NCBI GenBank assembly: GCA_037447605.1
Contig: CM074823.1
Coordinates: 930,001-994,000, forward strand
Direction of reading: 5' to 3'
DNA from: Zygnema circumcarinatum SAG 698-1b
Taxonomy: Eukaryota > Plantae > Zygnematophyceae
DNA: 64,000 bases
This document shows, one piece after another, positions 10,826-24,220 of the stretch (its first letter is position 1; each line of letters starts with the position of its first letter). Position numbers and translations under genes: made by a program. The notes below the pieces were generated by a model, which saw only the letters and a program-made list of their open reading frames with translations, ran no database searches and was not told the DNA's origin.

Positions 10826-13800
10826 CTATATGGGAGCAGTTAGGTTCATATTGCGGTAATTTACCGTCCATGGACCGGTCCCTCCGTTCCAAGCGCCGGA
10901 CCATTGGCCGTGGTAGACCCAACTTGCGTTCCAAATGGAGCCGTACAAGTACATGGGCTTGGAAGGGAATGTGGGGGTCTTGGCTGAGAGAACGGTACGG
11001 ACTATTTTCCCATCGACAGACCACCTGCAAGGGAGCGAGCGAGCGTGAGAGAGAGAGAGAGGGGGGGAGTGAACGAGAGAGAGAAAGAGAGAGAGCGGGG
11101 GGAAGAGAACGAGAGAGACAAACAGAGAGGGAGGGAGGGAGAGAGAACGAGAGAGAGAAACAGAGAGGGAGGGAGGGAGAGAGAACGAGAGAGAGAAAGA
11201 GAGAGAGAGGGGGAGAGAGAACGAGAGAGAGAAACAGAGAGGGAGGGAGGGAGAGAGAACGAGAGAGAGAAAGAGAGAGAGAGGGGGGGAGAGAGAACGA
11301 GAGAGAGAAACAGAGAGGGAGGGAGGGAGAGAGAACGAGAGAGAGAAAGTGAGAGAGAGGGGGGGAGAGAGAACGAGAGAGAGAAACAGAGAGGGAGGGA
11401 GGGAGAGAGAACGAGAGAGAGAAAGAGAGAGGGAGAGGGGGGGGGAGAGAGAGATAGGAAGAGAGAGAGAGAGAGCACAGAAAGGGCCGCATGAGAAACG
11501 AAGTACTTTTCAAGTTGAAGGGTTCGCAAATTCATGGCTATAGAGTTTTTTCTATAGGATTCAAAGTTCAGGTAACAAACTCCAGGGCTGCTGAACTGCA
11601 TGCAGATTTAGGGTTTAGGGTTTAGGGTTTAGGGTTTAGGGTTTAGGGTCGGAGGGGTTTTGGTTCACTCACCGAATCATGGAGGCGGAGTACTCGACGA
11701 AGTAGTTGTGGTAGTCCTCCGCGCAGTCGAAGTCGAGGGGGATCCATTGCTCGTTCCCCCCCAACCCGTTCACATAGAAGTTGGTCTGCACGCCGAAGTT
11801 GTTCTTGCCGAGCCACTCGAAGTCGATCTCGTCGTGCCCAATGGAGCTCTCTAGGGACGACAACTGTCACGTCACAGCAACAATCATCATCATCAACAAC
11901 AACAACATGCATGTTTTCATGTACCATCATCATCATAAACATCAGGAAGATCATCCTGATCATGGTGAACATCATTATGATCATCGTCAACATCGGCATC
12001 TTCATCATCATCATGGCTATCATCATCATAAACATCAGGAACATCATCATGATCATCGTCAACATCTTCATCTTCATCATCGTCATGGCTATCATCATCA
12101 TAAACATCAGGAACATCATCCTGATCATGGTGAACATCATCATGATCATCATTAACATCTTCATCTTCATCATCATCATGGCTATCATCATCATCATCAA
12201 CATGAATGCCTTAAGAAACCACGAGTATCCCGATGTGAGGTGTGCGACTCGCCGGCCCCCACGTGGCTAATGCACTAGGGACAAAGTTCGTAGGGTTTTG
12301 CAAACTCTTGTTTGGGTTTTTGGGTTCAGGGCCGCACATAGAACGAGGAGACGAATCCGCTCGTGTTCCCAGCGGCGCATTTGAACTCCGTCGAAAACGC
12401 GCCGTACTGGTACGGTACGGTCGTGTGCCACCGACCTCCTGTACGGCACCAATCTCACGTCGAAACGTCAGCACGAATTTCTCCTAGAACTTCGAGTGAA
12501 TTTCTATGTTCATGTAAGCTGGCCACATAAACAGTTTATTCCACGTGGAGAGTTCTAATTGGATACGACATATCGGAAGTACTGTACGGTGAACGGACTT
12601 CCCAAAGTCCAAAGTTCGTGAACAATCTCATAGAACAATCGCACCATGAATGCGTGCGTGTTCAACAAATCCATGCTCCTAGTGTTGGTGTTCATACATA
12701 CCACTTCCATCGCCTTTGAACTTGATGGAGGCCTCCCCGCGCGCGACCTCCATGTTGTCCGCGCAGTAGTCGAAGGCAAACGGAGTGACGGCCGAGAACG
12801 GAACGGATCCCGGAACTGCGGGCGCCATGGAAGTGGGTGTTGTGACGCTAACATTACTGAAGTCCGCATAGAACGGCGTGGCGGACATGTTCACATAGGG
12901 CGGCCATGGAGCAATGCCCACTGTGGAGGTAACCCACAGCGACATGTAGAGCTGCATGGTGGTTCCTTGGGGCAACACTTCCATCCCTGCATTGTCTAGA
13001 ATCCTAAGGAGCGTCTTGTCCGCGTACCATCTGCCACAACAACACATTGTTCAACAACATGTTGTGTCAAAACGTGAGAGTCACGCAAAGTTACCTGAAA
13101 TACCTTCAGAAATGCCCCATAAAGTAGTAAAGCTACTCCCTAAAAACCCTGATAAACCCTAAGAAAGGCCTGGGGCATTTGTTACTCACAGAACTTTACT
13201 GGGGGTCCAAATGATGGTGTAGGTGTGGAAGGCATCGGAGCAGTCATAGCCCAAGTCCACCACCATGCTGTTGCCGCTCCTCCCGTTTTGTATTGTGTTC
13301 AGTGACAACCGGCGCTGATCGTTGTATAGAAACTCCAAAATGATCGAGTATCGGCTGCTTTGATTCAGGGGGGTAGAGAGCTGTACATGCGCCGATTGGG
13401 GGGGAAGGGGGAGGGGGGAACTGGTTAGCCCATACAGTGGCTAAAACTGTGCTGCATTTGGGAACACAGAAAGGGAACGAGAAGTAGAGCGCAAACGGGT
13501 TGAAGCACTACTACGCTGCTTTAAAGTGAAAGGGAAAATTGCGTACATAGAATGCTGTGTTTGTTCCGTAGGCATCCCCCGATGGGCACTTAATGGCGGC
13601 TGAGAAGGTTCCAGAACTGTACCAGTCGTTCGTCCGAAGGCGCGCACCTGCCATGGATACATGCTTATCCGTGTTAATTGTGCTTTCATTTTGGGAGAGC
13701 GCAATCAAGAGAGGGAGAGGGAGAGAGGGAGAGAGAGAGGGGGAGAGAGAGAGGGAGAGAGAGAGGGGGAGAGAGAGAGAGGGAGAGAGAGAGAGAGAGA

Positions 13801-15227
13801 GGGAGAGAGAGGGAGAGAGAGGGAGAGGGAGGGAGAGAGAGGGCGAGAGAGAGAGAGAGAGATCAAAAGAGAGCAAAAGAGAGAGTGGAAGAGAGAGGGA
13901 GAGGGAGAGGGAGGAGAGGGAGGGGGGAGGGAGGAGGAGAGGAACGGAGCATGAGAGAGAGTGGAAGAGAGAGAGAGAGAGTGAGAGAGAGAGAGAGAGA
14001 GAGAGAGAGAGAGAGAGAGAGAGAGAGAGAGAGAGAGAGAGAGAGAGAGAGAGAGAGAGAGAGAGAGAGAGAGAGAGAGAGAGAGAGGGAGGGAGCGTCG
14101 TGCATACCTCCATACTCATCAAACTTGAGCCTAAAGCTGTTGGTATCAGCCTCCACTTGGCTTGGGTTCGAGTCCACGACTGTGACATCTGTCACCCTCG
14201 AACTTGACGCCGATGCGCGCCCCTTGTCGTTGAAAATGAGCTCCGTAAGATCGTCGATAATAGAGATACACGTGGCATCTGCTGATTGGAGGTATGCTTG
14301 CCCCATGTCAACCGTTGTGCCGGCGATATCTTGCATGCAAAGTGCAATCCCCTGTCGAATGTATTGAACTTTTCGGCGCGCAGTGCCCCAATTGTTGATC
14401 TTGATCAACGCCTGCGCCTTATCCACCTGATACATCGACTTTTTCAGGTAAAATTTGCACGTGAGATTGCTCTTGCTCTTGGAAAAACCGGACCTGAGAA
14501 ACTTCTTTACCCGCCCCAATTCGGCCTTCACTAGTGTACTGTTAGCAGGCCCCGTTTGCTGAAGCGAGCCAACGGCCACCGTTGCAGAGAACGGCTCAGG
14601 ACCGTTCTCTGTCGCTGTTCCAGTTCCAGTTCCGTTGGTCTCGACGATCGGAGTCTGGTTGCCAACTACTAAAGAATTCGAGTCGACTAAATTGGTCGAT
14701 CCCGTGCCCATATCGTCTGTCAAGATATCGTTGACTAAAGGGTTGACTAACTGCCGGTTTGTCGGACTGACATTGCCAGCAGCTGTTGGGGGGTCCACGT
14801 AAGCTCCCTGCGCCTGCTCGAGCATAAATTCGTAGTATCCGGAAAGCTGGTTCAAAATCCGTCTCGAATTTTCCGTATCATCCGATTTCTTCGGCTGATT
14901 CTGGTGCGTTCCCGAAATTCCGAACGGAATGTTTAACGGATTTTCCGCCGGAAGGAGATCTGGAAAGTTCCGGAAACGTGATAAGGTGAGAGCGGTGGCG
15001 AAGGAGCGCTGCTCCGCCGTCAGATTAGGAAGATCTTGCCAGGCGTGATCAAAGGCAGGATGAACCGAAGCTTGGGAAAATTCGGAGGATTCCAAAAAAT
15101 CCGAGAATTGGGTTGATTTCTTTTGGGTTTTTGAATTTTTAGAAACTGGGTTCGCCGGAACACGGGCTGCGGCGGCGCCTCCGAAAAAAATGACAAACAG
15201 AAAAACCAAGTATTTAAAGGACGTCAT
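10826..15227 (-). CDS. Secreted multidomain GH16 protein A (743 aa): signal peptide, PMEI-like helical domain, degenerate EG16 module, intact EG16 module; exons 14108-15227, 13547-13647, 13190-13380, 12702-13030, 12338-12438, 11673-11863, 10826-11024
   Basis: Seven GT-AG exons total 2232 nt in frame to TAG. Hydrophobic N-terminus MTSFKYLVFLFVIFFGGAAAA. Module 2 reads GRWHTTVPYQYGAFSTEFKCAAGNTSGFVSSFY-LSSLESSIGHDEIDFEWLGK...VQTNFY...FPSKPMYLYGSIWNAS, which is EG16-like and lacks the XET_C extension. Module 1 has RYSIILEF in place of DEIDFE. Confidence 0.92.
11880..12203. repeat. Compound (CAT)n microsatellite in intron 5 of GH16 gene A
   Basis: CAT-based repeat with higher-order reiteration, lying between exons 12338-12438 and 11673-11863. 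Confidence 0.9.
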
Positions 15228-23500: not shown

Positions 23501-24220
23501 GGAGGGTGGCTTCGTTCCGAAATAAATCAGCTGCGTCATTGCCTTAGTTGCTCCAATGCACTTGAAATCCGCCGATTTCAAATACGACTGCCCCCGAAAA
23601 CTTCTCACATTTGCAATGGACTTGAAACAAATCGAAATTTCTTGACGAGCAGATTGAAGTTTCATCCGGGCATAGGCCCAACGGCGGGATTTGGCCAAAG
23701 CCTGCGCTTTTCGCACGTCATTATACGATGTTCGAACATTCGTTAGGCACGTCTTAAATTGTCGACTCTTCCTATAGGCCGTCATAAGAATAGCCCTTAT
23801 ACTTGCGAGCTGCGTCGCCACGTCGGCCGCCAAAGTGGTGCTGTCTGCTGGAAGCAATCCCTGTTTCATGCCGACGGCGGAGGTTGAAGAAAACGACATG
23901 TGGGAGATCGCTGCGCCTGTTGCGTTTCCGTCAGAGTCAACGGGGACAGTTCCGTTACCCTCAACTACACCTATGTGGCCGAGTTTACTTAGCGGGTTCT
24001 CCTTCGGAATGAGATTTGGAGCGTTCATGAAGCGTGACAAAGTGAGGCCGTGGGCGAAGGAGCGCTGCTCAGCCGTCAGATTCGGGAAATCGAGGGATCG
24101 AAGGGCGTCGATTCTCTTAGAGGAGTCCGAAAGGTCAAACGAACCGGTAGCGTCTGCTCCGCGGAAAAGGGCTAACAGAACTACCAGTGAACTGAATGCG
24201 GTCATGGAAACTGCCACCAT
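20596..24220 (-). CDS. Secreted multidomain GH16 protein B (646 aa), paralogue of A; exons 23395-24220, 22985-23085, 22636-22826, 22007-22338, 21737-21837, 21269-21459, 20596-20794
   Basis: Seven GT-AG exons total 1941 nt in frame. Signal-like MVAVSMTAFSSLVVLLALFRGADA. Module 1 has RNSIYMEV in place of the catalytic motif; module 2 has QDEIDFEWLGKDNFGVQTNFY. Intron positions match gene A. Confidence 0.92.

What the first reader, a model, noticed from the sequence alone, without database searches (positions are those of the whole stretch)
10826..24220. Locally expanded family of secreted PMEI-like + pseudo-EG16 + EG16 fusion proteins
Seen: two complete paralogues (743 and 646 aa) and part of a third share the order signal peptide, conserved short motif, Cys-anchored helical domain, GH16 module without the catalytic motif, and GH16 module with EIDFE, ending with no XTH C-terminal extension. 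Established: characterised land-plant EG16 enzymes are small single-domain GH16 endoglucanases without signal peptides that cut mixed-linkage glucan, xyloglucan and cello-oligomers, and XTHs are single GH16 + XET_C. Inference: this is a modular wall-remodelling protein in which a dead module binds glucan and the helical bundle regulates or tethers the enzyme, possibly linking pectin and hemicellulose processing. I know of no description of this architecture but cannot search.
Basis: partly seen in the sequence, partly recalled or inferred. Interest (0 to 1): 0.88.

Follow-up and report, generated by a model that had tools for sequence, protein, structure and literature searches.

The report
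PMEI-fold tandem GH16 wall glucanases
Two neighbouring genes (one shown fully spliced) of what is probably a green alga close to land plants encode secreted cell-wall enzymes that join a pectin-inhibitor-like helical domain to a catalytically dead and a working glucanase domain; I found no description of this layout, and the inhibitor family was thought to be absent from these algae.

Summary
Confirmed: two minus-strand 7-exon genes (743 and 646 aa). All six introns of gene B are spliced in public transcript contigs; one intron of A is seen. Each encodes a signal peptide, a conserved 30-aa motif, a basic four-helix bundle, a GH16 lacking two catalytic residues and an intact EG16-like GH16 (EIDFE) without XET_C. 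The bundle misses Pfam PMEI, but its confident model (pLDDT 85) best matches Arabidopsis PMEI (Foldseek E 6e-4, rmsd 1.3 A; VIA Z 17). It lacks the PMEI N-terminal hairpin and first disulfide. Corrections: the third copy shows only dead-module exons here; the layout is not local, since a contig from another organism has it with matching introns; signal peptides are already known for algal EG16-2. The scan noted this layout earlier on another piece of this genome (s1-360956). Likely working: a secreted retaining beta-glucan endohydrolase, with the dead module and basic bundle as wall-tethering or folding aids (inferred). No paper describing it was found, and a 2026 review says charophytes lack PMEI. 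Organism identity is inferred. New variant of a known kind; interest 0.6.

The parts
10826..15227 (-). Gene A, 743 aa; exons 15227-14108, 13647-13547, 13380-13190, 13030-12702, 12438-12338, 11863-11673, 11024-10826
   Evidence: intron 5 seen spliced as a loose end
20596..24220 (-). Gene B, 646 aa; exons 24220-23395, 23085-22985, 22826-22636, 22338-22007, 21837-21737, 21459-21269, 20794-20596
   Evidence: all six introns spliced in transcript contigs
15165..15227 (-). A: probable signal peptide (aa 1 to about 21)
   Evidence: hydrophobic core aa 7-17 with small residues at the -3/-1 sites; crude check, not SignalP
24149..24220 (-). B: probable signal peptide (aa 1 to about 24)
14940..15032 (-). 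A: conserved N-terminal motif (aa 66-96; L..EqRS.A..LT.SRF), function unknown
   Evidence: 77% identical between A and B; core conserved in P0001
23996..24091 (-). B: conserved N-terminal motif (aa 44-75)
14229..14543 (-). A: PMEI-fold four-helix bundle (aa 229-333; Cys257, 297, 320; pI 9.6)
   Evidence: Atlas features: the ten best hits with a family share the PMEI family or clan
23516..23848 (-). B: PMEI-fold four-helix bundle (aa 125-235; Cys158, 198, 221; pI 10.5)
   Evidence: AF2 pLDDT 85; Foldseek and VIA best hit PMEI
13333..13347 (-). A: degenerate catalytic strand of GH16 module 1 (S-I-I-L-E); module spans about aa 344-537, exons 1-4
22779..22793 (-). B: degenerate catalytic strand of GH16 module 1 (S-I-Y-M-E); module spans about aa 245-440
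11816..11830 (-). A: intact catalytic motif E626-I-D628-F-E630 of GH16 module 2 (aa about 551-743, exons 4-7)
21412..21426 (-). B: intact catalytic motif E529-I-D531-F-E533 of GH16 module 2 (aa about 454-646)
1..388 (-). Third copy, partial: exon 2 (388-288) and start of exon 3 (82-1) of a dead GH16 module (A-I-I-L-E); runs off the window edge; no exon 1 found

Best explanation
A family of secreted, modular cell-wall beta-glucan endohydrolases, probably of a zygnematophyte alga (organism inferred). SHOWN: one spliced transcript model with signal peptide, conserved 30-aa motif, S/T/P/G/N-rich spacer, PMEI-fold four-helix bundle, dead GH16 and intact EG16/EG16-2-type GH16. The two GH16 modules arose by an old intragenic duplication, older than the split from the organism of L001. 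FROM FAMILY KNOWLEDGE: the C-terminal module uses the retaining double-displacement mechanism (Glu nucleophile, Asp helper, Glu acid/base). Lacking XET_C, it most likely hydrolyses beta-1,4 bonds of mixed-linkage glucan, xyloglucan or cello-oligomers, as EG16 does. INFERRED: the dead module is a non-catalytic glucan-binding or spacer unit. The strongly basic bundle is a targeting module that holds the enzyme on the anionic pectin (homogalacturonan) wall, or assists folding and secretion, and is not a PME inhibitor.
For: Gene models and repeated exon pattern. Splicing of all introns of B, including the bundle-to-GH16 joint and the joint next to the module boundary. VvEG16 is the best solved match for exons 5 and 7 and the dead exon-3 profile. 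Same layout and intron sizes in L001. Dead modules form their own clade at 100/100 support. dN/dS 0.40 for the dead module and 0.23 for the active one. The -1 platform Tyr is kept in all three dead modules, and a Trp at the +1 position is kept in A and B (alignment; positions as described in PMC6827312). Bundle: pLDDT 85, four helices; six best Foldseek hits are PMEI (E 6e-4, TM 0.76, rmsd 1.3 A); VIA Z 17.2 top; Atlas features point to PMEI for the other paralogue; Cys spacing 40 and 23 and pI 9.6-10.5 in all three homologues.
Against: No activity or binding was measured. The bundle has no Pfam PMEI hit and no profile hit to PMEI chains in the PDB, only 15-17% identity, and unrelated four-helix bundles score close (Z 15.6). 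The Atlas shape search listed no PMEI cluster. Exon 6 alone matches bacterial licheninases slightly better than VvEG16. The dead module has lost several cleft residues, so binding may be weak. No single transcript contig spans the whole gene. Only one outside homologue was found. The signal peptide was checked only crudely.
Confidence: 0.6

Rival explanations
1. The bundle is a pro-domain, as in type I pectin methylesterases: an intramolecular chaperone or silencer that keeps the glucanase inactive in the secretory pathway and is cleaved off before or at secretion.
For: Same order as pro-PME (signal peptide, PMEI-like domain, catalytic domain; PMC13516882). PMEI fold. A variable S/T/P-rich linker follows the bundle.
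Against: No RRLL/RKLL-type or R-x-x-L processing motif in the linker of A or B. A whole dead module separates the bundle from the active site.
Confidence: 0.2
2. The bundle is a working inhibitor of an algal pectin methylesterase or invertase, so one protein cuts glucan and locally keeps pectin esterified.
For: Best structural matches are PMEI, then the invertase inhibitor CIF. Charophytes have PMEs (PMC3741192). In the kiwi PMEI-PME complex the N-terminal region does not contact the enzyme (PMC8990755), so the bundle alone could bind.
Against: The N-terminal hairpin and its disulfide are absent (no Cys before the bundle). The bundle is only 38% identical between paralogues, the least conserved folded part. 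Identity to PMEI is 15-17%.
Confidence: 0.1
3. Module 2 is mainly a transglycosylase. The dead module supplies extra acceptor-side subsites and so replaces the XET_C extension of XTHs.
For: GH16 retaining enzymes can transfer to sugar acceptors (PMC6827312). EG16-2 is the proposed ancestor of XTH and is uncharacterised (PMC8711696). The dead module is conserved.
Against: The closest solved relative, EG16, is a hydrolase. The geometry of the two modules is unknown because the joined protein was not folded.
Confidence: 0.1
4. The bundle is an unrelated four-helix spacer that resembles PMEI by convergence.
For: No sequence-profile hit to PMEI. Four-helix bundles are common; TTYH3 scores Z 15.6.
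Against: Three methods on two paralogues all rank PMEI first, rmsd 1.3 A over about 116-120 columns, an extracellular setting, and a 40-residue Cys pair like the bundle disulfide of PMEI (spacing from own knowledge).
Confidence: 0.2

Closest known systems
EG16-2 of charophyte algae (Behar 2018 as cited in PMC8711696; 12 genes in Penium, bioRxiv 10.1101/835561)
   Same: Signal peptide, EXDXE motif, no XET_C, EG16-like sequence, multi-copy in an alga, biochemically uncharacterised.
   Different: No tandem dead module or PMEI-fold domain is mentioned in the texts I could read. Phylogenetic placement was not tested because no EG16-2 reference sequences were available.
Land-plant EG16 (VvEG16, PDB 5DZE-G and 5SV8)
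   Same: Best solved match for exons 5 and 7 (E about 3e-6 and 7e-12) and for the dead exon-3 profile (E 9e-12); no XET_C.
   Different: EG16 is a single-domain, single-copy protein of about 208 aa without a signal peptide. These are 646-743 aa, multi-module, probably secreted and multi-copy.
XTH (GH16_20)
   Same: Secreted GH16 with EXDXE and a Tyr at the -1 platform.
   Different: No XET_C, weaker matches (E 2e-5 to 0.55), and extra modules.
PMEI / invertase inhibitor superfamily (PF04043) and the pro-domain of type I PME
   Same: Four-helix bundle superimposes on AtPMEI1 at 1.3 A; Cys pair 40 apart; sits after a signal peptide and before a wall enzyme.
   Different: No N-terminal hairpin or first disulfide, no Pfam hit, no RRLL-type processing motif, fused to GH16 instead of PME, and in a lineage reported to lack the family.
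Bacterial licheninases and ExoK (GH16_21)
   Same: Catalytic strand region very similar.
   Different: Intron-containing; the six algal modules group apart from the three bacterial proteins at 99/99 support.

Membership tests
GH16 | Pfam PF00722 match above the gathering score | tested here: met
   Exons 3, 6, 7 of both genes score 23.7-55.9 bits against a cut-off of 22
GH16 (active enzyme) | EXDXE catalytic motif | tested here: met
   Module 2 only: EIDFE in A, B and L001. Module 1 lacks the first Glu and the Asp
EG16 (land-plant sense) | Closest sequence relative among solved GH16 | tested here: met
   VvEG16 best for exons 5 and 7 and the dead exon-3 profile; licheninases marginally better for exon 6
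EG16 (land-plant sense) | No signal peptide, single domain | tested here: not met
   Signal-peptide-like start and multi-module layout; definition in PMC8711696 and PMC9887094
EG16 (land-plant sense) | Hydrolysis of MLG and xyloglucan | not testable with these tools
   Needs an assay
EG16-2 | Signal peptide and no acceptor-side (XET_C) extension | tested here: met
   PMC8711696
EG16-2 | Placement in the EG16-2 clade and its signature residues | not testable with these tools
   No EG16-2 reference sequences retrieved; Behar 2018 not held; signature residues are only in a figure
XTH (GH16_20) | C-terminal XET_C extension | tested here: not met
   Both proteins stop after the last strand; no XET_C hit on exon 7
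PMEI/INVI superfamily | Four-helix bundle of PMEI shape | tested here: met
PMEI/INVI superfamily | N-terminal helical hairpin and four conserved Cys in two disulfides | tested here: not met
   Only three Cys, all in the bundle (spacing 40 and 23), none upstream; definition in PMC8990755
PMEI/INVI superfamily | Pfam PF04043 match | tested here: not met
   No hit at E up to 1; Atlas features give a lead only, score 0.76
PMEI/INVI superfamily | Inhibition of PME or invertase | not testable with these tools
   Needs an assay
Type I PME pro-domain | RRLL/RKLL-type processing motif between pro-domain and catalytic domain | tested here: not met
   None in the linker of A or B; motif from own knowledge

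The most novel reading that the evidence does not exclude
The bundle is a true homologue of the PMEI domain that existed in streptophyte algae as an accessory module on a glucanase, before land plants used it as the PME pro-domain and as free inhibitors. The PMEI-fold + pseudo-GH16 + GH16 protein is then an old, unrecognised class of wall enzyme coupling glucan cutting to the pectin matrix, and the accepted origin of PMEI (from pro-PME, in land plants) needs revising.
Probability: 0.4. Interest if true: 0.78.

Novelty: new variant of a known kind. Interest (0 to 1): 0.6.

Why it matters
Plant-lineage GH16 wall enzymes (XTH, EG16) are described as single catalytic modules, and EG16-2, the proposed ancestor of both, is uncharacterised. 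A secreted, expressed, conserved multi-module form with a pseudo-enzyme gives a concrete target for testing what algal EG16-2 does. Reviews state that charophytes lack PMEI and that the domain arose from the pro-region of land-plant PMEs (PMC13516882, PMC3741192, PMC8990755). Those surveys used a strict Pfam cut-off that this bundle fails, so a PMEI-fold domain on a different wall enzyme in a probable zygnematophyte would move the origin of the domain earlier and suggest a first role other than PME inhibition.

Tried and rejected
Database searches and folds were done exon by exon or on single-exon alignments, by reference. The joined proteins were not searched or folded; they were used only in local scripts. 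Blank or uninformative: three homologous-protein searches (only P0001, and length limits apply); Atlas with whole exon 1 of B; metagenome scan with exon 1 motifs; metagenome scan with exon 6 gave only bacterial licheninase/ExoK-type loci L002-L008; exact look-ups of window ORFs; exon 4 against the PDB. The single-sequence model of exon 1 was poor (pLDDT 44), though Foldseek already ranked PMEI first. P0002 was rejected as a repeat-inflated, unrelated hit. One search fetched a wrong paper, and Behar 2018 and McGregor 2017 are not held. Rejected readings: separate single-module genes (spliced joints); pseudogene (open frames, dN/dS below 1, expression); bacterial contamination (spliceosomal introns); XTH (no XET_C); transmembrane anchoring (no hydrophobic segment after residue 30).
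Full report
Observation. I rebuilt both genes from the sequence. Gene A (15227-10826) and gene B (24220-20596) lie in tandem on the minus strand, 5.4 kb apart. Exons 2/3 and 5/6 have the same sizes (101 and 191 nt) and phases, so the two GH16 modules come from an intragenic duplication. 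Profile comparison of the two catalytic-strand exons gives probability 97.8, E 1e-12. Pfam GH16 passes its cut-off on exons 3, 6 and 7 of both genes. Module 2 carries EIDFE. Module 1 carries S-I-I-L-E or S-I-Y-M-E, keeping only the acid/base Glu. Both proteins end after the last strand with no XET_C. The third copy is limited here to exon 2 (388-288) and the start of exon 3 of a dead module. An HMM of exon 1 finds nothing in 1-10800, and a 100-N gap lies upstream at 1248-1347, so its N-terminal half is unverified.

Expression. Contigs from four public runs (three studies) were laid on gene B. They skip introns 1-5 exactly at the predicted ends, with the joints seen in one to three runs each. 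Loose ends match exon 7 of B (intron 6) and exon 6 of A (intron 5 of A). Single contigs of about 1250 nt carry exons 1-3, joining the bundle to the dead module. Exon 4 itself encodes the end of module 1 and the first strands of module 2. No single contig spans the whole gene and the runs are not on record as RNA, but precise intron skipping marks them as cDNA. Split single-module genes are very unlikely.

GH16 modules. Against solved structures, exons 5 and 7 match grape EG16 far better than XTH or licheninase, as does the profile of the dead exon 3. Exon 6 matches licheninases and EG16 about equally. Land-plant EG16 lacks a signal peptide, but five of six Klebsormidium EG16-2 have one, and EG16-2 is defined by lacking XET_C (PMC8711696). 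Penium has 12 EG16-2. So EG16-2 is the right frame and secretion alone is not new. I could not test clade membership. Between A and B, dN/dS is 0.40 for the dead and 0.23 for the active module (simple counting, one pair), so the dead module is maintained as protein. In the alignment all dead modules keep the Tyr at the -1 platform position, and A and B keep a Trp at the +1 position described in PMC6827312, while other cleft residues have changed. This is compatible with residual glucan binding but does not show it.

Helical domain. Pfam and a PDB profile search give no PMEI hit. A model from a three-sequence alignment is confident (pLDDT 85, four helices). Its six best Foldseek matches are all PMEI structures (best E 6e-4, TM 0.76, rmsd 1.3 A; the next unrelated fold has E 0.075). 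VIA ranks AtPMEI1 first at Z 17.2, with an unrelated bundle at 15.6, and the top seven rows of the second look are PMEI or invertase inhibitors. Separately, the Atlas feature search with paralogue A returns PMEI clusters (score 0.76, a lead only). The Atlas shape search did not list PMEI. Three cysteines are invariant with spacings 40 and 23; from my own knowledge the bundle disulfide of kiwi PMEI also spans 40 residues. The N-terminal hairpin with the first disulfide, part of the family definition (PMC8990755), is absent. I therefore call it PMEI-fold and probably homologous (about 0.75), not a PMEI member. The bundle is basic in all three homologues (pI 9.6-10.5), and no pro-PME-type processing motif follows it.

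Distribution. A search of 1.84 billion representatives with exon 1 of B found one true relative, P0001. Its contig L001, from an ENA metagenome and lacking the GA-repeat style of this genome, carries the same N-terminal motif, three-Cys bundle, dead module (S-I-I-I-E) and active module. It has the same 101/191-nt exons, plus one extra intron inside the catalytic motif and a one-base frame break near 2545-2560 that may be a read error. In a small tree of six algal modules and three bacterial proteins, the dead modules form one clade (100/100), so the duplication predates the split of the two organisms. Other searches were blank, within their length and word limits. Earlier scan notes report dead+active GH16 genes on several other pieces of this genome. 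One follow-up (s1-360956) also saw the PMEI-like domain and claims relatives in peat moss, lycophytes and ferns, and another (s1-400593) reports a different N-terminal module. I could test only the existence of an outside homologue, not that range.

Organism. Not given. A TOM1/THH1-domain exon nearby, secreted multi-copy EG16-like genes and other scan notes point to a zygnematophyte alga. This is inference, and the PMEI-origin argument depends on it.

Mechanism. Most likely a secreted retaining endo-beta-glucanase (module 2) with two accessory units: a pseudo-enzyme that binds glucan or spaces the catalytic unit, and a cationic PMEI-fold bundle that tethers the protein to anionic pectin or aids folding. 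The anatomy is shown, the chemistry follows from GH16 knowledge, and the accessory roles are inferred. Rivals are a cleaved pro-domain, a true PME inhibitor, a transglycosylase using the dead module as acceptor platform, and a convergent bundle.

Novelty. Literature searches found no description of tandem dead+active plant-lineage GH16 or of PMEI-GH16 fusions, but the main census (Behar 2018) is not held, so tandem EG16-2 may have been noted there. [quoted passage not shown] The underlying survey used a Pfam cut-off of 1e-10 and one charophyte transcript set (PMC3741192), which would miss this bundle. Verdict: real, expressed, new variant of a known kind, interest 0.6. All database searches and folds were done exon by exon; the joined proteins were not searched or folded.

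Noticed in passing
window 12314-12441 vs 21712-21840: Exon 5 and the first ~25 nt of intron 5 are 94-95% identical between A and B (dS 0.08 against about 0.6 elsewhere; exon 7 dS 0.30), suggesting gene conversion between the paralogues.
   Followed up: partly
window 11537-11572 joined to about 12326 (laid at 21723): Contigs in two studies join the start of intron 5 directly to intron 6 sequence of A at a 7-nt microhomology without GT-AG ends, which would drop A's catalytic exon 6. It could be a deletion allele, a further paralogue or an artefact.
   Followed up: no
window 17531-18581: About 1-kb imperfect palindrome (fold-back or MITE-like element) between genes A and B, with related pieces at about 26800-27010 and 33880-34270.
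   Followed up: partly
window 18687-19219: About 90 degenerate copies of TTAGGG inside the chromosome next to the palindrome; similar arrays near 2980-3270, 40120-40440, 44980-45700 and 51770-51980.
   Followed up: no
window 4507-5802 and 5813-7108: Two 100% identical 1296-nt blocks flanked by 10-N gaps, probably an assembly duplication.
   Followed up: no
window about 3470-8650, minus strand: Exon-like pieces that from memory resemble a plant DUF639 gene; Pfam did not confirm the two pieces tested.
   Followed up: partly
window 28142-28693 and 39045-41523, minus strand: A THH1/TOM1/TOM3-domain exon (E 2.7e-6) and weak Kelch-repeat exons.
   Followed up: partly
window 23549-24214: Runs differ from the assembly and from each other at several exon 1 sites of gene B, including three in the signal peptide, so alleles or strains vary.
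   Followed up: no
L001 5009-5215: The outside homologue has an extra intron inside the catalytic motif, between the nucleophile Glu and the following Ile.
   Followed up: yes
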